Source of the DNA: Salpingoeca rosetta | Lineage: Eukaryota > Protista > Choanoflagellata | Assembly: GCA_033442325.1 (NCBI GenBank) | Contig: JAWQFM010000006.1 | Span: 1,806,873 to 1,870,872 of the forward strand | Direction: 5' to 3' | DNA: 64,000 bases | Shown: one piece after another, positions 2,936 to 60,206 of the stretch | Layout: every line of letters begins with the position of its first letter | Position numbering within the stretch: position 1 is the stretch's first letter | Position numbers and translations under genes: made by a program | The notes under the pieces: model-generated | The model's database searches: none | What the model was told of the DNA's origin: nothing | Seen by the model: the letters and a program-made list of their open reading frames with translations, nothing else

Positions 2936-3334
2936 ACCACCACCACCACCACAACTACACCCGCTCAGCCATTGTTGGCCATATTCGACCTGAAACCCCC
3001 CCCCCCCTCCTCCCCCCCCCTCTTCTTTGCCTCTTGCTCGGTGTATGTGTAGCTCGCAAAGCTATGTGTCTCGTGTGTCCCACTCGCCCCGTGCTTGATC
3101 CCGCCCCCTCCCCCAAACACTGTGGTAGGAATAACCCATGCTCCTTCCTTTCTGCCAACTCAACAACGTAAGCTCAAATGGAATCCGTTTACTCGAGAGA
3201 CTTGAACGAACCAACGAACCAATCAAGCAACATCTGACTGACAGCCAGCGAGCGAAGGGGACACACACTCACACACACACACACACACACACTCACACAC
3301 ACACACTCACTCAACACAACGCATGGGACATATG

Positions 3335-6300
3335 CTAGCTGTTTGCCTCTGTGCATGCGAGACAGCCCCTGACGAGCGCCTGGCAGAGCGGCTGCTCGGA
3401 TGCGGAACACACATTCACCAGAGCATGCACCGCTTCCTCAGAGAGAAGACCAGAGTTGAAGAACATGAGCCCAGCCATCAAAAACACGCGGTCAAGATCA
3501 ACGCGTTTGGCCGTCGCCATATCTGCTGCAGTGGCGGCGCCCGCTGTTGCTGCGGATGAACTGCCACTCTCACCCTCACCGACCCGATCACCACCACTAC
3601 CAACAGGGAAACCATCAGCCCTTTGAGTTGACACAGGTGCTGGTGCTGGTGATGATGACATGGACGACACACGGGATGACGGGCCTGTGGTGGTGCTGCC
3701 GAGCGCAAGGAAGAGTAAGCTGCGCTGGCGTGCGTCGCCGCAAGCGGCACTGAACAGACAGATGCACGCCTCGCGCCAGTGCTGTCCACGCAACACGTTG
3801 GGCAAGCTCAGGCACACCCACTCTGCCACCGCTGCGCCAAAACCAAGGCTCAGCATGCGCGCAAACACGTGGTACGTGATGTGTGCATGTGCAATGAGCC
3901 GCGAGCGCACGTCAGACATGAACGTGGGCCCTTCCTGCGGTTTTGTCCACTGCGCCATCACCATTTGCAGGATTTGCCGGGCTGGCCAAAAGTCCGTCAG
4001 CAAAAAGGACAGCGAGCGCGCCAAAACGAGAGCGGACGGCTCGTCCACCACCGTCTCCACCATACGAGTGATGCGATCGCCAAAGTTCAGGGGCAGTCGC
4101 TCCACAACAGCGCGTGGGGACGCGTCTCCAAGCTGCTCGTGGATCAGGTACTCGTCCTTGGAGTACAGCAGCGCCGTGGCGCACACCGTCTCACTCACGT
4201 CCAGAAGAGAGAAGAGCCCAGAGCGGTTGTTGACGTTACCGGCAAGCGTCAGCAGCGCGTCTGTCTCGCGGCTGTCCAGCACAAACGACAGCACGAGCCG
4301 AACGAGCGCAGAGAGCGTGCGGGAGTATGATGCTTCTGAGAGGTTGCCGGGCGCCAAACACATGGACGACAAGTCAGCCGTCAGGTCATACGTCAAGTTT
4401 GCTTTGTCCGCCTCCTCGGGGAACGATATGATCACCTGGCGATGCGTCGTGTGTTTTGGGGGGGGGGGCGGGGAAGGGAGGCGAGAGAGGATGTGAATCG
4501 GTGATTGGTGTGTTTGAAAGTTGTGTACGTGCAATTGAGTGCGGGGGTGTGTGACACACAACAAAGCACACCACACGACTACCCAGAACGACGAGCAGAA
4601 AGCCACACACACACACACACACACACACACAAGACACACACATTCTCTCTCATACACACACGCACACACACACACACATGCACGCACACACGTGCACACC
4701 TGGATTGCTGCATCGAATGCGCGGGCCCAAAACAGGCGGGGAACCCAAGCCGTGGTGGCGGCGGTGATCTGGGAATGCTCGAGCAACGCGTGTTTGGTCA
4801 GCACCTGCACGGCGTCACGAACGTGATCGATAAAGGGCAACGCTGCCAGGCTCAAGTGGCCTTGTGCAAGATACCTGTGACGATGATGATGGTGGTGGCA
4901 GGTGAACGGAAGAAAGGAATGGTGTCTTGCGATTGGATGTTGTATTGCGGCGAACAATAATTGCCGTGACCCACGCGTTCATCGCACATGCCTTGCAGGT
5001 GTGCGAAAAGAGGCACATGCACACACGCACACGCACACACGCACACACGCACACATGCACGCATGCACACATAGGCGGGCGCACACAGTAGCCGTCGTCG
5101 TTTACACTTACTTGATGCCTGTGAGTGCGGCCATGCGAACCGACGGGAGCTGGCTGCCGAGAGCCGTGTGGAGCATGTTCGAGATCAACTCCAGTCGGCG
5201 GTGGTCGCCCTGACAGAACAACCACACAGATAAAGTTGTCATGAAGACAACAACCAACATCGTTCAGCGTGCTTGGGTGATACAATACAATCCTACACAA
5301 CAACAGCGTGGCCATGCGGCTCGGCAATTGCAACACACACACACACACACTACACCCATGCGCACGCGTGAGACCTACACGCCATGGTGTTTCTCAAGGA
5401 GCACGTCGCATGACATACATCGTGGTTAATGGCCTGGAGCTTGCACAGGATGGGGATAACGGAGCGAAGAACAATGTGGTCGTCTGGGTTGGGGTGGGCA
5501 AAGCGAGGAGAGGGGGGGGGCCAAAACAAAATGTGAGTGGGGTGAAGTGGCAGCATTCAGCGCTCCCGATACATAAGCACCTTTCATGGGTTGTTGTTGC
5601 CTTCACACGCAAACACTGACACGCACGCGCGTACTCTTCGTTTCTCATGCACCCACCTGCAATCAGTTCACTGTTGGCCAAGTCGAAGAGGACAACAGCA
5701 ATGTCACTGAGCTGCTTTGCATCATGCACTTTATCCAACAAGACGTGCAGCGCTTCGCAGGCGCCGTTGAGGATCTAAAGAGGCAAAAGTGGTTTGTGAA
5801 GGTGTGTTAATTGGGCACTGGTATGGTATGACGATACATTCCAACGACACATCGCAATCAACCAGACACACGAACAGCATACACGTAAACATGCAGCCAC
5901 ACACATGCAGCCACACACACACACACACACAACGGATTGGGATACCTTGATAGCCTGGGAATCTCGCTGAACAAGCGACAGGCACATCTCGATGACCTGT
6001 GGCAGATAGATCAAGAAGCGGTGGCACTGGAGCTCGCCAGACGCAGCGTGCTCATCAACACAGCGCCGCAGCGAGGACACGGATTTCTGAAATGGGTGTG
6101 GGTGTGGGTGTGGAGATATGTTCAACAGGGGGTGCACAAAATGAGGTTGGTCAATGGTGGTGAACTGTATGAAGGCAATAAACCCACAGTGGTCATCATA
6201 CACACACACACACAAAAGCAAAGGAAACGAATCCAAACGCTTGCACACACACACATACGCGCGCACATACGCGCACACTTACGCATACACACTCTCTCTC

Positions 6301-38527: not shown

Positions 38528-39371
38528 TCACCGTGGCCGCAAGGATTCGATGGCAGCAGCAGCACGCGCGAGCGCAACCACGTGTTGCTGGAGCGCCTGC
38601 TGCTGTGGATACGTATCCCGCAGCTTCTCTGCTGCCCTCACGTGCTTCAAGAGCAGCTCGCATGCAGAGTGGAGGTTGGGGTCGGCGAGGGCGCTGGACT
38701 CGTCTTGTTGCTGCGCCTGTGCTTGCGTGACGAGCGCTTGCCACGTTGCGGGCGGTGTGGGCGTCGCTGCTGTGTTGATGGTATCTGGTACTGATGGCGA
38801 CGAGGACGGGCGGCTTGAGGAGAGGCCGATGCGGCGTGCGACGGTGCAGAGCAGAGCGGCCTGGAGAAAGTGCATGCTGCTGTAGTCTGAGACGTGGGAC
38901 TTGACCCACGCGGCTGCACGCTCAAGCTCTGCGTCAACGTGTGCGTGGTTGCCCAGGACGTAAGCCGTTTGCAGGACAAAGAGGCGGTGTGACCAGGCGT
39001 AGTAGTTCTTGGGGTGCTGTTCACTCGCACGCGCGCACACACGCGCCTCGTGCTCCAACTCCGCCACTGAAAGACGTTTGTCTCGCCGTACGTGCCTCTG
39101 AAGCAGCCACTGCCTGCAGCATCATAGTTGTTGGTTGTGGGTTGAGGGTGCGAAGCAGACGTTGGGCGACAGAGAATGGCACAAAGCAAGCCACATGGGC
39201 ACATGTGTGAGCGAGCAAAGCATGCTGATGGAGGACCATGGAGTCGCAGGACAAGCAAGTGTGTGTACTCAGACACAAGCGCACACACAGGCAAGGGCAC
39301 GAACGCGAAGGCAGACGTGAACAAATGGACGCACACAGGTAAGGGTACGAGCATGCAGACACATCAATTGT

Positions 39372-39439
<68 letters not shown>

Positions 39440-40074
39440 ACATACACACACACACACACACACGCACACGCACACCTGTGAGCCCATCCCACAGCAGTCT
39501 TTGGGTGGAGGGTGAGGACAACGTCAAGAAATGCCAGGTCGGCTTGCCAAGAAACAACGCCGTCCAGGACCAATTGCTTGCGCATGTTCCACACGTCGTA
39601 GTGGTTCCCATTCACCAGCAGCAAGATGCGGCTTGCGCTGTCTCGGCTGGCACCACTGTTATCCGCACTGCTCCTGCTGTCGCCCGTATCATCTTCGACA
39701 GCAGCATCGACAGCAGCATCGACAGCAGCATCGACAGCAGCATCGACAGCAGCATCGACAGCAGCATCGACAGCAGCATCGACAGCAGCATCGACAGCAG
39801 CATCGACAGCAGCATCGACAGCAGCATCGACAGCAGCATCGACAGCAGCATCAGCAGCGTGGTCACGTTTCATGCGCCTGTTGCCATACAACCTGCGTTT
39901 TGAGGACAGGTAGAGGTCCTTCAGTTCGCTGGCCAGCAGCGCGAGCTTGCACCCTTCCACAACGCACGACTGCTGCACGTCGCCTTCCACCATAGGCACA
40001 ATGCCGGCCTCATCGATGTCAGGATGCTCCTGCAGCAGCGCTGCCAGCCGCTCAAACGCACTGTCACCGTTCAT
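38528..40074 (-). CDS. PTAR1: Protein prenyltransferase alpha-subunit repeat protein, PTAR1-like (GGTase-III alpha)
   Basis: Two exons (40074-39476, 39113-38528). HPDIDEAGIVP (PTAR1 NPHIDEIGLIP), LLLVNGNHYDVWNMRKQLV, HPKTAVGWAHRQWLL, HPKNYYAWSHR and HVSDYSSMHF. The start ATG is my choice; the ORF extends upstream to a TTG at 40143. Confidence 0.8.
39697..39852. repeat. Perfect coding minisatellite (GACAGCAGCATC)x13 encoding (DAAV)13 in PTAR1
   Basis: 13 identical 12-bp units read directly, in frame with the minus-strand exon. Confidence 0.95.
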
Positions 40075-40792
40075 CTCGCTCGCTGCCGCGCCAATCAGAT
40101 GCCGAATATTTACGGGTGTTGCCAACAAGGTTTCTGCATCCAAGATGGCGCACAGATCTGTCTGTTAGTGTGATTTTGGTTTTATTGGGGAAAACTCGCT
40201 CGCTGAAATCTTACACTGCTCCCAGCGCTCAGAGGTGGGGAAAGCGATTGGCGCAAACAAAGGGCAGCGGTGTGCATGGGCGAATGTGTGTGAGAGCAGG
40301 CGCCACATAGGTGGATTTGAGTTTCTTCTTGGGTTCCCCCTCTCCCCCTTTTGTCTCCCCCCCCTCTCCCCTTGTGTCTCTCCCCTTCTCTCTCGGTGCT
40401 GCAGGCCATACAAGCAACGAAGTAGCAGCCAATATACGAGCAAGCAAAGCACCAGCGAGTCACGTCAACACGCGCATGCGTTTGTGGTCTCGTACAATAG
40501 TGATGATCTGAACAAAAGAAGCAACAGCCAGAGTGAAAGAGACGCATTTACGCCGCGTCAAGTGCATCAGCTACGCAAACAAATTACATTGCATTACATG
40601 AAACAGGTTTGCAACAACAGCAACAACACTCATGCCAGAGCAAACAACATCCTAAGATTACAGCAATTGAATGCAAACGAACACAGGCAGATCAAGTGAA
40701 GCAACAGAAGAAAGGAAATGCAGGGCAAATAAATGAGGAGGAACAAGGGAGGGATAAGTGAGACACAGAAGGGCAGACTGAGCCGCACAAGA

Positions 40793-48573: not shown

Positions 48574-49129
48574 AGTCACACACACACACACACAGACACA
48601 CACACAGACACACACACACGACACCTGTCCATCTGCGCCGGCAACGGCTTGAAAGTGCTGGGCAACGGGGTCTGCTGGTGGAGGGTAGGCGGGGTAGCCC
48701 TGCTGTGGTGCAGGGTATCCTTGCTGTGGATAACCCTGTGGCTGCTACTCGACATAGCCAGATGTAGCACGCACGCCAGCGTGACTGGTGGTGGCAATCA
48801 AGCCACAAACGCAAACAAACAAAACAAGACGACGCACACGACGCACACACACACACACACATACATACATACATACACACATACATACATACATACATAC
48901 ATACATACATACATACATACATACAGTACATACATACATACNNNNNNNNNNNNNNNNNNNNNNNNNNNNNNNNNNNNNNNNNNNNNNNNNNNNNNNNNNN
49001 NNNNNNNNNNNNNNNNNNNNNNNNNNNNNNNNNNNNNNNNNACAGAAAAAACACAAGACAAACAAAAACACAGACACACACAGACACACAGCACACAGAC
49101 ACACAGACACACAGACACACAGACACACA

Positions 49130-49294: not shown

Positions 49295-49486
49295 GGCTGT
49301 GAGCTCAACGAAGGGGGAGGAAGAGGCAGATCGCTGGACTGGCTGGTTGGTGGTTGTCGGCAACAAGACACACGATGCAACGAAATGAATGAAACACTGA
49401 ATCAAGCAATCAAGCAATCCTCTCCATCCACAACAACGAATACAAACAAAAGCCTGCAGCAGCTGCGGCGAACACAACAGCGATCG

Positions 49487-50845
49487 ATGATGATGAGGTG
49501 GAGGGGCGGGGTTGCGCTGGGAGCTGGCCCACATGCTGCATCATCATCCGTCCTGCCCTCATTCTCCTGCTTCCCAAGCGCGCTGGTGCTGGTGCTGGTG
49601 CTGGTGCTGGTGCTGGTGCTGGTGCCGTCGGCGTTGCCACTTGTGTGTGCACAGGCTGTGCTGGAGGAGGATGCAGCGGGAGCATTCCACATGAACACAT
49701 CAGCGGCGACAGCGCCTGTTCTCTTGAATGGACTGGACGTGGTTGGTGTGTTGCAGGAGCAGCAAGATGTGATCCACGCGCAGGCGGCTGCGATCGAGAC
49801 GCTGCGAGACAAGAACGCGGCTCTCAAGACGTCGCTATGCAGGAGATACCCGCCTGGTGCAGATACCACCACCATTTCGGACTTCACGGGGATCGAGAGG
49901 TGGCTCGGCGGCGTGCTGGCAAGCAACGGCTTCATCTACGGCATTCCATATCGAGCCACGTCTGTGCTGATCATCGACCCAACAACCAACACGGCAGATA
50001 TAACCACGATCACAGGGTCCCATCTGAGTGGGCTGTGGGGCGGCGGTGTTCGTGCGAAGGATAGCAACTTGATTTACGGGTTCCCTCACACCGCCAGCTC
50101 TGTGCTCATCATCGACCCCGACACCAACTCCGTCGACGTCACCTCCATTCCCGTTCCCGGCGCCGTTGCTGGCGCGTGGGCGAGCGGCCTTACCTCCGAC
50201 TACAACGGCCTCATCTTCGGCATCCCTTGGCTTGCGTCTGCCATCTTGGTCATCGACCCCAACACCAACACTGCCGACACCACAAGCATGCCCACCACTA
50301 CCAGTGCTGATGTGCTGTACAAGTGGTATGGCGGTGCGCTTGCCCCTGACCACCGCATCTTCTGCATCCCCCTCAACGCTGAATCGGTGCTCATCATTGA
50401 CCCCGTCACCAACACGACGGACGAAACAACAATCGCCAGCCTGCCTGGAAGCGGCTGGTGGTACGGCGGCGTGCTCTCAAAGCGCAACGGCCTCATCTAT
50501 GCTGCGCCCCGCAACGCCCCCGCCGTTCTTGTCATCGACCCCTCCACAAACGCCTTTGACTACACCAGCATTGCTGGCCTCCCCATGACCGTTGCAAAGT
50601 GGCGTGGCGCCGTGCAAACCAGGGATGGCCGCGTTGCGTGCATACCCAGCGGTGCCACCTCTGTCCTCCTCATCGACCCAGCCACCAACACCACAGACCA
50701 CACTTCCGTCACCACAACCGACATCCCAGGGAGCTTGTACAAGTGGTTTGATGGCGCGCTTGCTCCCAACGACCTCATCTACGCCATGCCCCACGCCTCC
50801 CCAAGCGTGCTCATCATTGATCCGGGTCTTTGCAACCTACAGTGA
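49487..50845 (+). CDS. Intronless secreted protein: signal peptide, short beta motif and coiled coil, then a 7-repeat beta-propeller
   Basis: One uninterrupted ORF. Hydrophobic LVLVLV...AQA signal, coiled coil LQEQQDVIHAQAAAIETLRDKNAALK, and seven ~45-aa repeats of consensus W-x-GG-(V/A)L-x(3-4)-G-x-IY-x-IP-x2-A-x2-VLIIDP-x-TNT. Confidence 0.85.
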   Translation: MMMRWRGGVALGAGPHAASSSVLPSFSCFPSALVLVLVLVLVLVLVPSALPLVCAQAVLEEDAAGAFHMNTSAATAPVLLNGLDVVGVLQEQQDVIHAQAAAIETLRDKNAALKTSLCRRYPPGADTTTISDFTGIERWLGGVLASNGFIYGIPYRATSVLIIDPTTNTADITTITGSHLSGLWGGGVRAKDSNLIYGFPHTASSVLIIDPDTNSVDVTSIPVPGAVAGAWASGLTSDYNGLIFGIPWLASAILVIDPNTNTADTTSMPTTTSADVLYKWYGGALAPDHRIFCIPLNAESVLIIDPVTNTTDETTIASLPGSGWWYGGVLSKRNGLIYAAPRNAPAVLVIDPSTNAFDYTSIAGLPMTVAKWRGAVQTRDGRVACIPSGATSVLLIDPATNTTDHTSVTTTDIPGSLYKWFDGALAPNDLIYAMPHASPSVLIIDPGLCNLQ

Positions 50846-51457: not shown

Positions 51458-51650
51458 CTAGTTCCACTTGAAGTCAAACTGGATCTCGTCTGCCCGCGCC
51501 ATCAGCTCACGCTGGGCTTGCTCCTGATGGTGATGTGTTGTTGCAGTGTGTGAGGGTGGAGGAGGGGGTGGGACCGTCTGGGTGAGGCACAGAGGTAACA
51601 ACAAGGGAGGGCGTGCCACAAATACGAACGCACACCACACACACACACAT

Positions 51651-51693
<43 letters not shown>

Positions 51694-52103
51694 ACACACA
51701 CACACACACACACATGTGCAAACAACAACACACATGTACACAAACCTTCTCCTCTTCGTCGCGCCTGCGCTTCTCTTCCAGCTCGCGCTGTAAGTGTTCC
51801 ATCTCCGACGACCTCGCTACCTCTTCTTCGGCTTTCTTGCGCAGATACTCGCGGCGCAGCGCCTCGGCATGCTTCTTCTCTTCCTCAGCGCGCTCTGCAC
51901 GCCGTCGCTCAAGCTCAGCCATAAAGTCCTCGTCAAAGTTGATGCTTGTCACTGCAGTGTTGCGATGGCACGTGCCATCGAGGAAGGGAAGGCGCGGGGG
52001 GGGGTGCAGTTGGTCGTGTTGGTGATGAGGGTGCGTGGATGTGAGGGAGAAGCAGCACAGGGTATTAACGCAAGCAGCGAACAAGACAAACCAACACTGG
52101 CAC

Positions 52104-52173
<70 letters not shown>

Positions 52174-52580
52174 CACGCACCCGAGATGACGGAGGAGCGC
52201 TTGTTTGAGCCAGATGCGGTGCTGCTGTTGTTGTCGTCATCGTCGTCGTCGTAGAAATCATCATCGCTGTCGCCCTGACTTGTCTGCAGTGGTGCTGTTG
52301 CGTCTGCAAACGGGTTGCTCATGTCAAAGGGGTTGCTCGACTGTGAGGTGAGCGCTGGCTTTTGCTTCTTCTTCACAGAGGCCGTCTTCTTCGCCACAGC
52401 GGGGCCCTTCTTGCCGCCCCTCGGCTGCTGCTGTTGCGTTGACGCTTTTGAGGAGGAAACGGCCGTGTCAAACTCCGTCATTGTCTCGTGCGCCTGTTGG
52501 GCAGAGGCAACATCACACATGTGAGTGAGCGAGTGTGTGTGTGTGTATGTGTGTGTGTGTGTGTATGTGTGTGTGTGTGT

Positions 52581-52650
<70 letters not shown>

Positions 52651-55600
52651 AGCAGCAGCCGTGCGAAGACTGCAAGAACTTGCATCACGCCCAAACATGC
52701 CACCACCACCACCACCACCACCACCACCACCACCACCATCAACTCCACAGTCTTTCGCACCTTCTTGCGCAGCTCTTCGATGCGGGCCTCGGCCTTGGCC
52801 AAATCCTCGCTGTCCTGGAGCTCAAACCCGAGTTCGCCCCTGGTGTGCACGCACGCGTCAGTGAGATTCCCCGGTGTGGGCAACGCAGACAAAGAACACA
52901 TGCACAGACACAGGAACCCACGCACATGCAAAGGAGCAGACACACACAAACATACACGGACACACAGCCACACACAGCCGCACACAACACACAGACACAA
53001 ACATACACACACACACACAGCCGCACACAGCCACAAACAACCACACACACACACAAAGCTGTGTCACTAACAGGGCGGCCTGTCGTGTCGTCTGCCCTGT
53101 GCCAACACCGGTGAGCACCGTCTTCTTCGCTTCGCGTCGCTTGCGGTCCTCGTCCGTCTCCGCCCACAGCACCTGCGGGTTCAGTGCCTGGTAGATGCGA
53201 CTGTGGCCCGACGCTGCGCTGGCAGACGCAGTCACTGTCTTCGTGGCTGTCGTGGCCGTAGCGCTTGTCACGGTTGCTGTTGTTGTTGTTGTAGTTGTTG
53301 TTGACGACGATGCTGTGATTTGTTCCGCCTTCATTGCCACCTCAGCCTGCTGCTGCTGCTGCTGCTGCTGCGTGACTGGCGCTGCGTCTGGCTTCGCCTG
53401 TTGGGCGTGCCCATCTGCTGTAGACGTGGGCGTGGTCACAGCGTCACTCACGCTGCCACCTGCGCCGCTGCTCGCGGTGCTCACGTTGCTGGCCGTGCGG
53501 CTGTGTGTATCTCTTCTCTTCACGGGCGGAGGTGGTGGCGCCTTCTTCTTCTTCTTCGCTGCAACCGCAGGTGCTGCTGCCGTCCTTGCTGGCGACGCAG
53601 GCGTTGAGGACGTCTGTGACCCTTGCCGAGAGTGGCCGGGCGTCTTGCGCGCAACCGGTGGCGGTGGCGGCTTCTTCTTCTTCGCCGCAATCGCCGCCAC
53701 AGACAGCGGCACACCTGTTGTTGCAGGCGCAGCTGTTATTGCAGATGGTTTCTCTGTTGGCTGTGCCGCTGTCGCCTCCTCGGCTGCTGCTGCCGCTGGT
53801 GTTGTTGCTGGCGTTGCTGTTGCTGGTGCCTGTTGCGCTTCCTGCTTTGGTGCTTCCAGGAAAGCGGCACCTGTTGTTGCCTCTGCTGGCTTCTCTTCAG
53901 GCGCTGGCTTCCCTTCGTGCACATCGACCGTCTCCGTTGTAGGTTTCGGCTCTCCCTCTCTCTTCTCATGGGTAACCTCTGCTGCAACGACCTCCTTCTC
54001 TGCTTGGGTCTCTGGCTCTTCTTGTGGCGCAGCTGCCGTGGTAGCGGCTGGGGTCACATCTCCCTTGGTTGTCTCCGCCTGTTCCTCTGCTTTCACTTCT
54101 TCCTTCTCCTCCCCTTCTTCCTCTTCCTTCTTCACTTCAACTGCCTCCTGCTGCTCCTGCTCTTCCTTCTTCACTTCAACTGCCTCCTGCTCCTCCTGCT
54201 CCTCCTGCTGCTCTTTCGCCTCTCCTTCTGCCTTCTTCTCCTCCTTCTTCTCCTCTTCCTCCTCCTTCGTGACCACCGGCTTTGGCTCATCAAACGTCAC
54301 TGCAAACGCATCCTCGCCCTTTTCCTGCGCTGCTGCTGCGGTTGTTGTGGATGTTGTGGGCGGAGGGGCAAACGGATCGTCGTCGCCAAACCCAGACGCG
54401 CTCGCGTCAGATGCCGTCTCAGCAGCAACAGCGAATGGATCCACAGATGAGTCATCAAACAGGGGGCCTGTGGCGGCGGGTTCTTTGGCGCCGCTGCCTT
54501 CTTCTCCACTGCCCTGCCCACCCTGCTGTTGCTCACGCTCAACAGCAACAGCAGCAGCCGGCGTCTCCTGTGTTGCAAATGCGGCCTCATTGCTATTGTC
54601 CCCTTCCGTTGTGGCGGTTGCTGCCGCTGTTCCCCACGCGTCTGTTGCCCAGTCGCCCGTGGCTGCCGCTGTCACAGCAGTAGTCGTGGTGGTGGTTGCG
54701 GTGGCGCCCTCACCGGCCAACGCATCAGCTGTCGCTGGTGCTGCTGTCACGGGCTGCAGGAACGGGTTTGAGGCGTCAAATGGAGACGAGGACTCCGCAG
54801 CCGTCGCCTCTGGCACAGACTTGATGCGGAACTTGATGGTGTTCGTGCGTGCGCGGGGCTTTCGCTCCTCATCATCGCTATCGCCGCCGCCGTCGCCATC
54901 GCCAGCACCGCCCATGCGCGCGTGTCCCGCAGCATCCGCTTCATCCTCGCGCTCTGTGTCGGTCGTGTCGCTGTCGTCATCATCCTCCCTCTTCTTGTCG
55001 CTGAACGTGGCCTTGAACAGGTCGGCAGGGGACGGCCCAAACGGGTTGCGAGGGTCGTTGTCTTTCACAACCGTGAAGCCTTCCTCGTCCACCTCGGGCT
55101 CGCTGGTCTGGCGCTTGATCTGGTCCTCCAATTGCAGCACCTTCGCCACCGCCTCGTCTTGCGTCAGTTTCCCGCTCTTCACCAGCATTAACACCTCCAG
55201 CTGCTGTTCTTTTGTCAGGTGCAGCTCCGACGCCTTGAACGTGGGCGGCTCGCTGGACTGCCGTTTCACAGCCGCTGCCTGTGACCCTTCATCGCCCTGT
55301 GCCGATGACTCTGATGGCTTTGATGACGCTGCTCCTTGTGCGTCCTCCTGTTGCTGCTGCTCTGCGCCTTCAGCAGCGGCGGTGCTGGCTGCTGTTGTGG
55401 CTGCAGTGGTGGTTGTGGTTTCCTCTTCCCCTTCGTCTTCTTCTTGTTCCGGTTGTTCTTGCCCTTGTTGCTGTGCTTCGCTTGCTGCTGCTTGCGGGTG
55501 ATGGTCTTGTTGCGCTTCAGCCACATCTGCACCAACAGCGGCGCTCTCCTCCTCTGCTTTCTCTGCTTCATTAGCAGCTGCGTCTTCGCTTGATGCCTGC

Positions 55601-56013
55601 GCCGGCGTCTGTGCCTCCTCGCCAGCACCTTCCACGGCCGTTTCCCCCGCTTCTTCCTCATGCTGTTCCTCCTCCACTGCCTCGGTTGACTCTGCTGCCT
55701 CGGTTGAGTGGGCGAGCATGGCAGCGCGGTCCAGGATGGTGCGTTGGTGCCCACCATCTGTGATGCCCATCTCATCAAGATCAGACGCCGTCACGTCAGA
55801 CACAAACTCCGTGTCGTCAAAACCATGCTCGATAAACGTCTGCGTGTATCTCTGCATGAACGCCAACACACGAGTTGTGTGTTGTGTTGTGTTGTGTTGT
55901 GGTGCGTGAGGGGAAATATGCGTGAGTTAAGTGCGGGCACGCGTGCAGGGGTGCACACAACAAGACAAGGAACATCAGGGACATCATGCACATGCACACA
56001 CCATCCCCCCCCC

Positions 56014-56074
<61 letters not shown>

Positions 56075-59000
56075 GGCGACACAATTCCGGCCCACTCAAC
56101 TCAACAACTCCCCAAAAAGCAACGCAGCCCAACGCACACACCTCGAGCTGCATGTCCTGCAGCCAGCTGTGCACGGAGGACGATGCTGCGTCAGATGTCG
56201 ACGTGCGACCAGACGGCGCAACAACGGCAAACGACCCCTGTTCCTGTTCCCGTTCCTGCTGCTGTTCGTCCCGCTGTTGTTGCTCTTGCTCATGTGTGCT
56301 TTCCTCGCTCGTCACGGCAACGGCCTCAGCCACTTGCGTCGTCTCTTCTGTCTCCTCCTCCTGCTCAACATCGACCACGCTCTCGTCAGCGCCAGCGCCA
56401 GTGACCGTGGTAGTGGTGGTGGTCTTTGTCTTGGTTGTCGCGGTGCGAGTGGCAGTGCCCGCGGTCACGGTCAGGCGCCGTGGTGCCTCGCTAAACAAGT
56501 CAGACTTGACTGCGCGCGAGCTGCGAAGCGTCTCTCTGTTGGGCTTACGGTGGCTCATCTTGGGGCGGGAGAGGGTGTTGTGCCGCAGCGGCACCTGGTT
56601 TTCCAGCGCGGCGTTGATGTACGCAAGCTCGTCGGAGGAAAACATTTCCGATTGACTCAGCGCTTTCTTGAAGTCGCGTGTGCGTTTCATTTGCGATTCT
56701 ACATCAAGGATGCGGTTGATTGCCTCGTCCACCGTCAGCTTGCCCAGTTTCACCTGCGCAGTTTCGTTCGAGAAAAGGGAGGGGGGATGATGTGTGAGTG
56801 GGTACGTGTGCACGTGCGTGTGTGTGCACACACAGAGAGAGAGAGAGTGTGTGTGTGTGCATGAGTGCGTGGAAGTGCGTGAGTGTGTGTGTGTGCATGA
56901 GTGTGTGCATATGTGTGTGTGTGCATGTGTGTGTGCATGTGTGCATGAGTGTGTGCATGTGTGCGTGTGGGTGTGTGTGTGAAAGAGAGATAGAGTGCAT
57001 GCGTCTCTGTGTTGGGCACCCGTGTTCCAGGCGCACGAAGCCCATGCGAGAAACAAGACAACAATTTGCCAAGAGACACAATCACACGACCCTGACCGAC
57101 CTGGTGCATGATGGCCTTCCTGGCCTGATCCGGGATGCGAATGTCCTCGTCTTCCTGCTCTTCCGTATCATCGCCTTCCTTTGCGCCATCACCATCAGCA
57201 CCATCAGCACCATCAGCACCATCACCAGCGTCACCGTTCTCGTCGGCCTTGCCTTCATTGCCGGTGCCGCCGCCGGGGAGACTGCCGAGTGCAAGCAGTT
57301 CCTCAACAGCAAGCACTTTCGCGATGGCTTCGTCAACAGACAGCTTGCCATCACGCACCATGCTCATCACGGCGATGCGCTGCTCGTCCGTCATCTTCAT
57401 CTCGTTTGCCTTCAGCTCTGTGCTCGGTTGGATCACACGCACGTGCGAGCCTGCACCCGCACCAGACGCCGTGGAGGCTGACGACGATGATGACGACGAC
57501 ACCCCACCGACGGCTGCGGTCACACCCGCACCGGCGCCATTGTCCTCCTTCTTGCGCCACCGCTTTGTCAGCGATCGCAGGAACTTCTTTCCGCGCGTCT
57601 CGCGCCGGGCCGGGTGTCCGTGTTCGCCACCGCTGCCGCCCAACTCAGCAGCAGCGGCATCCCCGGCCTCGCCGTCCTGCGCCTGGGCGTGCTCCTGCTG
57701 CTCGTGGTGTTCTTGATCTTGGCTGTTGCCAGCTGGGCTATGCTCGTGCGCGTCCGTGTCTGCAATATCCTCTGGCTGAGCAGCAAAGTTGACAGACTTG
57801 TCGTGTTTCTTGTGCTTCTTTGCCTTCTCGTGCTTCTTCTTCTCCTTCTCCTTCTCCTTGTCCTTCTTCTTGTTCTTCTTCCCGCCGTCAGTCCCTGCTG
57901 CTGCTTCACCATCGCCATCAGCGTCCTCCTTGTCTTCTTCCCTGGAGACAGACACGAGCTGTGTCCCCGACGGCGACCGTGCAAACGAGATCATCGTCGT
58001 CGTTCCCCGCGACTCCAGCTCCCCAAGCGTGTCGCTCTGCACAGATGTCAATGGGGTGGTGGTGATGAGTAATGATGAGTAATGATGAGTGGAGGTAAGT
58101 GGTGTGAAATGAAACAAAGCAAGCACAAAACGTATGAAGGTTGGGGTCGTGCGCATGCACGGGTCGTGTGGCAAGCAAGCAGACACACTCGTGCTGTAAA
58201 CACACACAAACACACATACATACATCGCACAAACACACACATACATCGCACACACACGCGCGCACATACCGCCTCGCCGTCGTCTGTGTCTGTATCTTGT
58301 TGGTGCTTGTGCCCGTTTGCAGTGACAGCATCGCCATTTCCTTCGTCCTGCTCTTCCTGCGGTTGTTCTTCCTGCTTTTGCTGCTCCTGCTGGTGGTTGG
58401 AGCCAGGTTGCGCCTCCGCTGCTGCTTCCTGCTGTGCGCGCTGCTTGTACTTGTCCTTGTCGCTGCCGCGCACGCCGGCTGGTGGGTAGTGCTTGAGGCT
58501 TGCCTCATACTCGGCCTGCTGCTCTGGGGTGAGGTCGTCAAAGTAGGCCGGCTCCTCGTCGGGCCGCTTCGGCTTGAGCTGCTGCGATTGCTCCTGCGCC
58601 ATGAAAAACGCGTCGTTCTTAAACGACACCATGTTCTGCGCCAGCTGCTCTCGCCGCTTCTGCCCAGACTTGAACAGGCTCAGGCTGAACGTGCGTGAGG
58701 ATGTGGATGCCGATGACGAAGATGGTGCGGGTTTCTTCTTCTTCTCGGCTTTACGGACAGAGTGCTCCCGCAGATCCTCCAGCACCTCAGCGACGGCAGC
58801 GGTGTCTGAGGGAGAAAAGGGGGGGGGGGTTGGTGGTAGGTCATTGGTGCATGTACGTGTAAAGGGTGCGAGATGAGAACTTGGATGAGATGAGTGAACA
58901 GCTTGTTTGTCACTGCTGATTGCGTGCATGCTCGCACAGCGGCACACGCATGCACACGCACGCACGCACGCACACACACACACACACACACAACATACAA

Positions 59001-59328
59001 CCACGCACACACACACACAACCATACAAGCACACACTCGTCTAACTCTAACCTGATTCCACCAAGTCTGCGATTTCGTTGATGAGGTCGTCTGGGATATC
59101 AGCAGAGCCATCATCTTTCCTGCTCGCGTAGTCACCCGCACAGTCACACAAGGAAAAAAAAACACCCCCAAAGGTGAGCAGATTCAAGACACAGCAGACA
59201 ATCAAAGCCTCCCATGACACCAGTCATGCTGACAGGGCACTGCTCCACACTCACGTATATGGGGGCTTCCACAGCTTGACACCGCGTTGGCGCAGGGCGC
59301 TCTTGATGTTTTGCTTCAACGTCGCCAT
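51458..59328 (-). CDS. Large (~2000 aa) mosaic scaffold: NUB1-like N-terminal domain, 3 SHOCT-like helical repeats, SAM domain, endocytic linear motifs and C-terminal coiled coil
   Basis: Exons 59328-59255, 59119-59052, 58805-58270, 58036-57101, 56753-56142, 55851-53072, 52839-52761 and three further 3' exons join with matching phases and GT..AG sites. SAM: VHSWLQDMQLERYTQTFIEHGFDDTEFVSDVTASDLDEMGITDGGHQRTIL. Ends ...DEIQFDFKWN* at 51458. Confidence 0.85.
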
Positions 59329-60206
59329 TCTTTCTCTGGCGTGGGCATCCACGTGAGCTGTGCCGGGACCTTGAAGGCAGTTGTTGCGTCTGCTGGCCGG
59401 AGTGCTGCTGTCATGCACTGCCGCAGAGGGTGGCGTGCCTTGTGCTAACATGACCAAGCAGGCACAAGTAAGGGAACCAGAAACGTTCAAGGATGAGACA
59501 CCGCAGTGTGTGGTGTGCGTGTGTGTGTGTCAGGAGGTGAGTTGTACGAGTGGTACGAGTGGTACGAGTGGGTCAGGAGTGCGGTGGTGGTTGATTGATG
59601 AATGGGATGAATGAATGAATGAAAGAGTCAATCAATGGCGATGTGTTGGATGGACGGATGACTGTGAACCAACGGATGAATACAAAGTGGTGCTGTGAAC
59701 CAAGCGCGTGTACAGGGGTTGCACAGTTGGTTGTGGACAACGCCACGCTGGCTGACAAGGACGAGGGCTGAACAAGTGCAATGACATGACAGGGAGAGTG
59801 TTGCTGGCTGGATTTGTTGGGTGGTGGAAATCAAAACACAGAGCAGCGTGTGCCCACCTGATGGCAAGCGGTGAGAACCTTCTGAGTCAGTCACAACCGG
59901 CAGCAGCAAACTGTGGCGGTGGTCCTGGGCCGCGAGCAATGCAAGTGTCAGGATAGGGAGGGGGAGACGCGTGTCTCGTATCACAACACAGAGCAGAGAG
60001 TGGTCACGTCTTTGATGTGGTCGAGGTTGGGAGTTGTGTTTGTGTGTGTGTGTGTGGTGTGAGATTGCTCTTGTTGTGTCGCTTTGCCTTCTTGCTTTGG
60101 CTTCAGGGAAAAAATAAACGAACCACCCCCCGATACCAATTTTTTAATTTCTACTGGCGATTCGATGCCGAATTAACGAAAGCTGCCGCTGCTGCTTGTT
60201 GTTGTT

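What the first reader, a model, noticed from the sequence alone, without database searches (positions are those of the whole stretch)
58745..59328. NUB1-type N-terminal domain grafted onto an unrelated giant scaffold protein
Seen: three small exons, mostly invisible in the ORF track, splice to MATLKQNIKSALRQRGVKLWKPPYTKDDGSADIPDDLINEIADLVESDTAAVAEVLEDLREHSVRKA. Known: human NUB1 begins LQAKLTQFLREDRIQLWKPPYT...EVEKVIEEIRCKAIER and is followed by UBL and UBA domains, acting in NEDD8/FAT10 delivery to the proteasome. Here no UBL or UBA follows; the protein continues into SHOCT-like repeats, a SAM domain and endocytic motifs. Inference: the NUB1 N-terminal domain can act as a mobile module, possibly linking ubiquitin-like-modifier biology to membrane trafficking. 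I know of no described protein with this architecture.
Basis: partly seen in the sequence, partly recalled or inferred. Interest (0 to 1): 0.85.

Follow-up and report, generated by a model that had tools for sequence, protein, structure and literature searches.

The report
NUB1/SASH1-type helical domain on choanoflagellate scaffold
The first three exons of a 1,897-residue choanoflagellate scaffold gene really do encode the small three-helix domain found at the start of human NUB1, but Pfam already lists that domain (PF26285, named after the scaffold protein SASH1), so this is a new arrangement of a known module.

Summary
Observation confirmed.

The homology to the NUB1 N-terminal domain (NTD) is solid:
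- An HMM of 55 animal NUB1 NTDs, none chosen through my query, scores it 62 bits (E 4e-12 at a library size of 1.8 billion).
- It still scores 28 bits with KLWKPPYT masked.
- Profile against profile gives 99.7%, E 1e-25.

The exons belong to one 10-exon, 1,897-aa gene. It aligns end to end (E 7e-177) with a complete transcript ORF of Salpingoeca infusionum that has the same layout. RNA-like runs hold only the exon-sized share of words.

The module is mobile: it sits at the N-terminus, the C-terminus or on both sides of a SAM domain in other choanoflagellate proteins, and a second gene of this genome carries it. It is not unknown, though. Precomputed Pfam calls it PF26285 'SASH1_Homeodomain' on NUB1 and on the orthologue.

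Deleting the NUB1 NTD has no effect on FAT10 degradation in vitro, so no link to ubiquitin-like modifiers follows.

The protein most likely works as a disordered multi-docking endocytic or cortical scaffold. It has SAM, NPF/DPF motifs, polyproline runs and a coiled coil.

A specific kinship with SASH1 rests partly on my memory of its sequence. The scan has not noted this before.

The parts
59255..59328 (-). Exon 1 (74 nt): start codon and helix 1 plus the KLWKPPYT loop of the PF26285/NUB1-NTD-type domain
   Evidence: Matches NUB1-NTD HMM positions 8-31. RNA-like runs hold exon-only word shares.
59052..59119 (-). Exon 2 (68 nt): loop and helix 2 of the domain (KDDGSADIPDDLINEIADLVES)
   Evidence: Contiguous HMM alignment across the junctions.
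58270..58805 (-). Exon 3 (536 nt). The first ~74 nt (to ~58732) encode helix 3 of the domain. The rest is a disordered region with segments shared with the orthologues (MVSFKNDAFF, YFDDLTPEQQAEYE).
57101..58036 (-). Exon 4: disordered region, SHOCT-like motif 1 (residue 441) and the start of motif 2 (residue 527)
   Evidence: Pfam SHOCT-like_DUF2089-C 18.8 bits, below the cut-off. The orthologue P0002 scores 40.4 bits, above it. Repeat list.
56142..56753 (-). Exon 5: rest of SHOCT-like motif 2, disordered region, first helix of the SAM domain
53072..55851 (-). Exon 6 (2,780 nt): rest of the SAM domain, SHOCT-like motif 3, NPF x2, DPF x2, two PPPPP runs, long low-complexity regions.
   Evidence: SAM_1 56.2 bits on the spliced E5/E6 peptide. 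Motifs.
52737..52839 (-). Exon 7 (103 nt)
   Evidence: Junctions placed in frame (GT..CAG), guided by the order of P0002's sequence
52181..52493 (-). Exon 8 (313 nt): NPF x2 (SNPFDMSNPF)
51746..51951 (-). Exon 9 (206 nt): conserved C-terminal charged, probably coiled-coil helix (INFDEDFMAELERRRAERAEEE...)
   Evidence: tblastn of P0002 residues 1679-1749, 45% identity. No coiled-coil predictor was run.
51458..51523 (-). Exon 10 (66 nt with the stop): C-terminus ...IQFDFKWN*
   Evidence: P0002 ends ...MQFSFQW.

Best explanation
The finding is the start of one expressed, 10-exon gene (59328-58... down to 51458, minus strand) of a choanoflagellate, most likely Salpingoeca rosetta. It encodes a 1,897-residue, mostly disordered scaffold protein that is conserved among choanoflagellates.

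Residues 1-72 form a genuine member of the three-helix domain family that makes up the N-terminal domain of NUB1. Pfam lists this family as PF26285 'SASH1_Homeodomain'.

Downstream lie:
- three ~40-residue 'ASE..(S/T)DE(E/Q)R..V..V+.G.L(S/T)V(D/E)EA' helical motifs (SHOCT-like);
- one SAM domain;
- two polyproline runs;
- six NPF/DPF motifs;
- a C-terminal charged, probably coiled-coil helix.

Shown: the exon structure, the domain homology, the conserved architecture, expression at the level of exon-only word shares, and the mobility of the domain.

Inferred: the protein acts as a multi-docking adaptor at endocytic or cortical sites. NPF motifs would recruit EH-domain proteins. DPF motifs would recruit the AP-2 appendage. 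Polyproline would recruit SH3 partners. SAM and the C-terminal helix would mediate self-association or partner binding. The N-terminal domain would be a protein-protein docking module with a still unknown ligand. It is not a ubiquitin-like-modifier or DNA-binding device.
For: Gene model:
- The ORF is 5,694 nt with no internal stop, and all nine introns are GT...CAG.
- A single blastp HSP covers residues 5-1896 against 8-1768 of P0002, E 7e-177.
- P0002 is a 'type:complete' transcript ORF of Salpingoeca infusionum.
- tblastn of P0002 hits the exons in order.
- The spliced E5/E6 peptide restores a full SAM domain: 56 bits, against 31 for exon 6 alone.
- Runs of four studies hold 0.61 of the words of 56700-59400 and 0.49-0.57 of 59052-59480. 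Those are the shares expected from exons alone; DNA-like runs hold 0.99-1.00.

Domain:
- NUB1-NTD HMM, 62 bits.
- hhalign of non-NUB1 modules against NUB1 NTDs: 99.7%, E 1.3e-25, 71 columns.
- The family profile hits human NUB1 residues 3-70 at 2e-16.
- PF26285 is listed on NUB1 orthologues, P0002, P0017 and P0007.
- The AF2 model has pLDDT 84.5 and three helices. The weak structural neighbours are mostly homeodomain-like folds, best Z 6.8.

Scaffold reading:
- [ND]PF occurs 6 times against 0.18 in shuffles, 0 of 2,000 reaching it. P0002 has 11 against 0.35.
- Other module proteins also carry NPF/DPF (P0004, P0005, P0008, the C1 gene). P0008 lies next to an ArfGap ORF.
Against: - The junctions in this species rest on frame, GT-AG sites, domain continuity and orthology.
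- The 'RNA' label of the runs that hold the words is the tool's guess.
- An upstream in-frame ATG at 59451 could add 41 residues.
- The sequence itself could not be scanned against PF26285, which is absent from the local Pfam copy.
- Nothing here tests binding to EH domains, AP-2 or any other partner.
- The ligand and function of the domain are unknown even in NUB1.
- SHOCT-like in this sequence is below Pfam's cut-off.
Confidence: 0.78

Rival explanations
1. SASH1-arm reading (compatible with the best explanation, but stronger). The protein is a pre-metazoan relative of the parts that set SASH1 apart from its SLY-family paralogues: the N-terminal arm with an 'MSDEERIQLMMMVKEK..' motif, and the helical bundle just before SAM2. 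Under this reading SASH1 arose when such a scaffold fused with an SLY-type SPIDER-SH3-SAM core.
For: - Pfam's name for the domain is SASH1_Homeodomain.
- A 2026 review describes an uncharacterised, confidently predicted helical bundle at SASH1 residues 1092-1170, just before SAM2 (PMC13467429).
- Two SASH1 segments typed from my memory score 33 bits against the NUB1-NTD HMM and 48 bits against an HMM of the choanoflagellate SHOCT-like motifs.
- Module and SAM occur together in P0001 and in this protein.
Against: - The SASH1 letters came from memory, and no tool could supply them.
- No SH3 or SPIDER/SLY region is found here or in P0002.
- The SAM domain is closer to SHIP2, Caskin and ANKS1 SAMs (E 1e-16 to 1e-14) than to SASH1 or SAMSN1 (E ~1e-7).
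- The domain order differs: the module is N-terminal and ~660 residues from SAM.
- Shared short motifs and shuffled domains do not show orthology.
Confidence: 0.3
2. One reading: the module carries NUB1-like ubiquitin-like-modifier (NEDD8/FAT10) or proteasome function into a trafficking scaffold.
For: The domain homology to NUB1 is real. The scaffold has endocytic motifs.
Against: - Deleting the NUB1 NTD does not change FAT10 degradation, and FAT10 binding is unchanged when NTD and UBL are removed together. The UBL, core and UBA regions do that work (PMC12285911).
- None of those regions occurs here.
- FAT10 is described as acting in the mammalian immune system (abstract of PMC12285911).
Confidence: 0.06
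3. Gene-model artefact: exons 1-3 belong to a separate small gene, and the scaffold starts further downstream.
For: No junction reads were obtained. Exon 3 ends in a low-complexity region.
Against: - Transcript ORFs of two other choanoflagellates carry the same N-terminal module joined to downstream features: S. infusionum (1,768 aa, the whole architecture) and Mylnosiga fluctuans (764 aa, SHOCT-like and DPF motifs but no SAM).
- The S. infusionum ORF aligns end to end with this model.
- There is no in-frame stop, and phase-0 GT-AG junctions link E3 to E4.
- The word shares fit exon-only contigs across the whole stretch.
Confidence: 0.03
4. The domain is a working homeodomain-like DNA binder, which would make this a nuclear protein.
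For: Pfam's name. The weak structural neighbours are mostly homeodomains.
Against: - The structural scores are in the range common for any three-helix arrangement: Z 5-6.8, and no Foldseek match at E<=1e-3.
- The module has net charge 0, whereas DNA-binding homeodomains are strongly basic (my own knowledge).
- The columns kept across the family are L12, L19, W20, P23, Y24 and L59. That they are buried core residues is my inference.
- The rest of the protein looks cytoplasmic or endocytic.
Confidence: 0.04

Closest known systems
NUB1 (NEDD8 ultimate buster 1) N-terminal domain, residues 1-72
   Same: Homologous ~70-residue three-helix domain with the (I/V)KLW-x-PPY(T/S) loop and LExLR in helix 3. 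It sits at the very N-terminus in both proteins.
   Different: NUB1 continues with a UBL, a helical core 'trap' and three UBA domains. Here none of these follows. A NUB1 core profile finds nothing in this genome at E<0.1, which is weak evidence only.
SASH1 (SAM and SH3 domain-containing protein 1) and Pfam PF26285 'SASH1_Homeodomain'
   Same: The same Pfam domain family by precomputed hits on the orthologue. Both are long, mostly disordered multi-docking scaffolds with SAM. SASH1 possibly shares the 'SDEER..MVK' motif, but that comes from my memory of its sequence.
   Different: No SH3 or SPIDER/SLY region, and one SAM instead of two. The module is N-terminal and far from SAM, rather than directly before SAM2.
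Endocytic adaptor scaffolds rich in NPF/DPF motifs (Eps15, epsin and Dab2 type; from general knowledge)
   Same: Long disordered regions carry repeated NPF and DPF motifs far above chance, plus polyproline and a probable coiled coil.
   Different: No EH, ENTH/ANTH, PTB or UIM domain was detected. No binding was tested.
Other choanoflagellate PF26285-type proteins (P0001 S. punica, P0005 S. kvevrii, P0004 Mylnosiga fluctuans, and the gene at G000:C1:2922773-2922925)
   Same: The same module combined with SAM, SHOCT-like motifs or NPF/DPF-rich disorder.
   Different: The module sits at the C-terminus (P0005, C1 gene) or on both sides of SAM (P0001). These proteins are much shorter (538-764 aa).

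Membership tests
PF26285 / NUB1-NTD-type three-helix domain | Significant profile match over the whole ~70-residue domain, not only the LWKPPY core | tested here: met
   - 62.1 bits against an HMM of 55 NUB1 NTDs.
- 27.9 bits with the core masked.
- hhalign 99.7%, E 1.3e-25.
PF26285 / NUB1-NTD-type three-helix domain | Hit to the curated Pfam model PF26285 itself | not testable with these tools
   The model is absent from the local Pfam copy. Precomputed hits list it on the orthologue P0002 and on NUB1, P0017 and P0007.
PF26285 / NUB1-NTD-type three-helix domain | Three-helix fold | tested here: met
   AF2 model with pLDDT 84.5 and helices at 2-15, 35-45 and 49-71. Structural neighbours are weak and mostly homeodomain-like.
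NUB1 family (full protein) | UBL domain directly after the NTD | tested here: not met
   No ubiquitin or Ubiquitin_5 hit in any exon or in P0002. NUB1 orthologues do hit.
NUB1 family (full protein) | Helical core and three UBA domains | tested here: not met
   No UBA hits. The NUB1 core profile A4 finds nothing in this genome at E<0.1.
SASH1 / SLY family | SPIDER/SLY region followed by an SH3 domain | tested here: not met
   No SH3 or SLY hit in the exons scanned or in P0002.
SASH1 / SLY family | SAM domain | tested here: met
   SAM_1 scores 56.2 bits (cut-off 23) on the spliced peptide. The nearest solved SAMs are SHIP2, Caskin and ANKS1, not SASH1.
SASH1 / SLY family | SASH1-specific N-terminal 'MSDEER...' motif and the pre-SAM2 helical bundle | tested here: inconclusive
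No tool-supplied SASH1 sequence was available.
SHOCT-like_DUF2089-C (PF22746) | Score above Pfam's gathering cut-off (27 bits) | tested here: inconclusive
   This sequence scores 18.8 bits. The orthologue P0002 scores 40.4 bits and P0004 20.9 bits.
NPF/DPF endocytic adaptor | Several NPF (EH-binding) and DPF (AP-2 appendage-binding) motifs in disordered regions | tested here: met
   4 NPF and 2 DPF against 0.18 expected. The motifs are also enriched in P0002.
NPF/DPF endocytic adaptor | Binding to EH-domain proteins or AP-2, and location at endocytic sites | not testable with these tools
   Needs experiments.

The most novel reading that the evidence does not exclude
PF26285 is an ancient docking module with one conserved ligand, still unknown, shared by NUB1, SASH1 and a set of choanoflagellate endocytic scaffolds. 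This 1,897-residue protein represents the pre-animal scaffold from which SASH1 took its N-terminal 'MSDEER' arm and its pre-SAM2 bundle. If so, a genetically tractable choanoflagellate could show what the uncharacterised NUB1 NTD and the SASH1 1092-1170 bundle do.
Probability: 0.25. Interest if true: 0.6.

Novelty: new variant of a known kind. Interest (0 to 1): 0.38.

Why it matters
The domain's function is unknown in both human proteins that carry it.
- In NUB1 it can be deleted without effect in the FAT10 assay (PMC12285911).
- In SASH1, a 2026 review still asks whether the predicted bundle before SAM2 is a real folded domain (PMC13467429).

Finding the same domain in several choanoflagellate proteins and in a dinoflagellate NUB1-like protein argues that it is a real, autonomous, ancient module. 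In the choanoflagellate proteins its position varies and it mostly keeps company with SAM and NPF/DPF motifs.

This also gives a unicellular, genetically tractable setting in which to look for its ligand. It does not reveal a new kind of system. The domain family is already in Pfam, and the rest of the protein is an ordinary, if very long, adaptor.

Tried and rejected
- **Homologue search on the long ORF.** The search for homologous proteins on the 1,003-aa exon-6 ORF gave nothing; low-complexity words swamped it. The whole-length search with P0002 returned only P0002 itself.
- **Read laying.** After that call those places went to no database or search tool. They were masked in the local tblastn. 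They were otherwise handled only inside closed local scripts: translation, a local hmmsearch and a local blastp against P0002.
- **PF26285.** It is absent from the local Pfam library and from the paper library. SASH1 peptide strings were also not found in papers.
- **ESM Atlas.** Feature searches of P0002 residues 1-75 and 530-650 gave no usable hit. Fold search 'atlas' failed four times because the machine was down.
- **Foldseek against the PDB.** No match at E<=1e-3.
- **Complex prediction.** P0002 module with P0002 SAM gave no verdict (score 0.01) and is no evidence either way.
- **Canonical NUB1 in this genome.** Not found with P0010 or with a core profile. The genome is intron-rich and partly masked, so this does not show absence.
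- **Rejected readings.** Chance similarity, a separate small gene, DNA binding and a ubiquitin-like-modifier role; see the rival explanations.
Full report
**Organism and setting.** The window is G000:C6:1806873-1870872 of a 55.4 Mb, 68-contig genome. Its introns are rich in (GT)n and (CA)n. The nearest relatives of the gene are choanoflagellate proteins. Other agents' notes name the genome Salpingoeca rosetta. I did not check the name beyond these points.

**Observation.** On the minus strand an ATG at 59328 (context GAAAGAATGG) opens a 74-nt exon that ends at a GTGAGT donor. A 68-nt exon follows at 59119-59052, and a third starts at 58805 after CTCAG. Exon 3 is not small, however: it is 536 nt.

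**Is the NUB1 likeness real?** Yes.
- phmmer of the peptide against every PDB sequence ranks human NUB1 first, at E 9e-4. Query residues 7-65 align with NUB1 10-69, so the position at the N-terminus is the same.
- A HMMER pass over 1.84 billion representatives gave 17 hits at E<=1e-3. They include canonical NUB1 orthologues. P0010, for example, matches human NUB1 over its full length at E 2.7e-80.
- To avoid choosing NUB1s by their likeness to my query, I collected NUB1 orthologues by full-length similarity to P0010 and built an HMM from 55 of their N-terminal domains.
- That HMM scores the spliced peptide 62.1 bits, E 3.7e-12 even at a library size of 1.84 billion. With KLWKPPYT replaced by X it scores 27.9 bits, and helices 2-3 alone score 27.0 bits.
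- Among 812 window ORFs used as decoys, the only one to score was the ORF that contains exon 1.
- A profile of nine non-NUB1 modules against a profile of 28 NUB1 NTDs gives 99.7% probability, E 1.3e-25, over 71 columns.

The match runs unbroken across both exon junctions, which supports the splicing.

**Do the first exons belong to the large gene?** Yes.
- A 10-exon model has 5,694 nt, no internal stop and GT...CAG at all nine introns. It encodes 1,897 residues.
- Exon coordinates are 59328-59255, 59119-59052, 58805-58270, 58036-57101, 56753-56142, 55851-53072, 52839-52737, 52493-52181, 51951-51746 and 51523-51458.
- P0002 is a 1,768-residue ORF marked 'type:complete' from the Salpingoeca infusionum transcriptome in EukProt.
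- It aligns with the model in one HSP, residues 5-1896 against 8-1768, E 7e-177. It also hits the exons in order on the genome.
- P0002 has the same N-terminal module, the same conserved segments after it, three SHOCT-like motifs, a SAM domain, many NPF/DPF motifs and the same C-terminal helix.
- A 764-residue ORF of Mylnosiga fluctuans (P0004) also starts with the module and carries SHOCT-like and DPF motifs.
- The E5/E6 junction restores a complete SAM domain: 56.2 bits over profile positions 5-63, against 31.1 bits for exon 6 alone.

I could not see junction reads.

There is indirect evidence of expression. Runs of four studies hold 0.61 of the sampled words of 56700-59400 and 0.49-0.57 of 59052-59480, while DNA-like runs hold 0.99-1.00. 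By my count, 31-letter words lying wholly within exons would give about 0.60 and 0.49-0.59. The second range depends on how far the 5' UTR reaches.

That UTR may include an in-frame ATG at 59451, which would add 41 residues. The orthologues start directly before the module, so I keep 59328 as the start.

**What the domain is.** The local Pfam copy has no model for it. The precomputed annotation of the protein collection uses a newer Pfam release and lists PF26285:
- on most NUB1 orthologues;
- on P0002;
- as the first family along NUB1 P0010;
- as the only family on P0017 and P0007.

Its name there is 'SASH1_Homeodomain'. The module is therefore already a curated family that joins the NUB1 NTD with a region of SASH1.

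A 2026 review of SASH1 describes a confidently predicted but uncharacterised helical bundle at residues 1092-1170, directly before SAM2. The review asks whether it is real (PMC13467429). I take this to be the PF26285 region. A SASH1 segment from that area, typed from my memory, scores 33 bits against the NUB1-NTD HMM. This is unverified.

The AF2 model of residues 1-74, built from a 43-sequence alignment, has mean pLDDT 84.5 and helices at 2-15, 35-45 and 49-71. The conserved LW-PPY stretch lies in the loop after helix 1. Structural neighbours are weak: no Foldseek match at E<=1e-3, and a best VIA Z of 6.8. They are mostly homeodomain-like folds. That fits the Pfam name but shows only a common three-helix arrangement.

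**Mobility of the module.** Module positions found:

| Protein | Species or source | Arrangement |
|---|---|---|
| This protein, P0002, P0004 | this genome, S. infusionum, M. fluctuans | module at the N-terminus |
| P0001 | S. punica | module on both sides of a SAM domain |
| P0005 | S. kvevrii | C-terminal, after SHOCT-like motifs (three by eye, two caught by my pattern) and NPF motifs |
| P0006, P0012, P0017 | Logan assemblies (P0006), ENA metagenome (P0017); P0012's source was not looked up | C-terminal, after proline-rich regions |
| P0008 | metagenome | after ankyrin-like sequence, next to an ArfGap ORF |

In this genome a profile search finds the module at only one other place, G000:C1:2922773-2922925 (-). 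There two exons encode a C-terminal module that scores 51 bits once spliced. It lies after a DPF-bearing region.

NUB1-like NTD-plus-UBL fragments also occur outside animals, for example in Symbiodinium.

**Function.**
- In NUB1 the NTD (residues 1-72) can be deleted without effect on FAT10 degradation, and removing NTD and UBL together leaves FAT10 binding unchanged. The UBL, core and UBA regions do that work (PMC12285911).
- None of those regions is present here. No tie to NEDD8 or FAT10 follows from the domain.
- The module has net charge 0. The columns kept across the family are L12, L19, W20, P23, Y24 and L59. I read these as core residues, so DNA binding looks unlikely to me.
- The rest of the protein has the marks of a multi-docking adaptor. 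It has four NPF and two DPF motifs against 0.18 expected, with 0 of 2,000 shuffles reaching that count.
- It also has two PPPPP runs, a SAM domain and a conserved C-terminal charged helix.
- My best reading is an endocytic or cortical scaffold whose N-terminal domain docks an unknown partner. The function is inferred, not shown.

**Relation to SASH1.** By Pfam the protein shares the PF26285 domain and a SAM domain with SASH1. It may also share a third element. An HMM of ten choanoflagellate SHOCT-like motifs scores 48 bits against a segment of the SASH1 N-terminal arm typed from my memory.

It is not a member of the SLY family. No SH3 or SPIDER region is present. Its SAM is nearer to the SHIP2, Caskin and ANKS1 SAMs. 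I rate a specific evolutionary link to the SASH1-specific arms at about 0.3, pending a check with the real SASH1 sequence.

**Novelty.** No paper in the library links NUB1 or SASH1 with choanoflagellates, and none mentions PF26285. The domain family is known and the orthologue already carries its label. What is new is this architecture and the set of shuffled architectures in choanoflagellates. It is a new variant of a known kind, of moderate interest. The scan's earlier notes hold nothing on NUB1, SASH1 or SHOCT.

**Limits.** There are no junction reads. The SASH1 comparison rests on memory. The 'RNA' label of the runs is the tool's guess. A canonical NUB1 was not found in this genome, which does not show that it is absent. 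The module-SAM complex test gave no verdict.

Noticed in passing
G000:C1:2922773-2922925 (-) = L007 about 8330-7895 (-): A second gene of this genome carries the same module, encoded by two exons at its C-terminus (...VKTELRQKRIKLWLLPYTDEHG... / ...RRHVASAVEKLRVMAYNKK..., stop after NTLA). The upstream exon holds two DPF motifs. Long N runs lie further downstream in the locus.
   Followed up: partly
window 57100-56754, 56141-55852, 52736-52494, 52180-51952 (introns of this gene, minus strand): Introns begin with GT-rich or (GT)n tracts and end with CA-rich or (CA)n tracts before a CAG acceptor. Another reader noted the same polarity elsewhere in this genome (s1-435464).
   Followed up: partly
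window 59451 (minus strand): An in-frame ATG lies 41 codons upstream of the chosen start, with two out-of-frame ATGs (59414, 59348) between them. Word shares suggest the 5' UTR may reach this far.
   Followed up: partly
window ~49400-50845 (+): Neighbouring long ORF with about eight repeats of an '...IYG(I/F)P...A..VL(I/V)IDP.TN..D.T.I...' unit, which looks like a beta-propeller-type repeat protein. A 100-N gap lies at 48942-49041 within the listed ORF, upstream of the repeats.
   Followed up: no
window 39364-40143 (-): ORF with a perfect (DAAV)x13 tandem repeat inserted in what looks like a helical-repeat protein exon.
   Followed up: no
L017 (JGI metagenome contig), 1965-2579 and 3001-4080: The module-bearing fragment P0008 (ankyrin-like sequence, then the module, then NPF) lies about 400 nt downstream of an ORF with an ArfGap domain on the same strand. 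This may be one eukaryotic ArfGAP-ANK-module gene split by prokaryote-style gene calling.
   Followed up: no
They lie in a low-complexity, acidic or lysine-rich part of exon 6.
   Followed up: no
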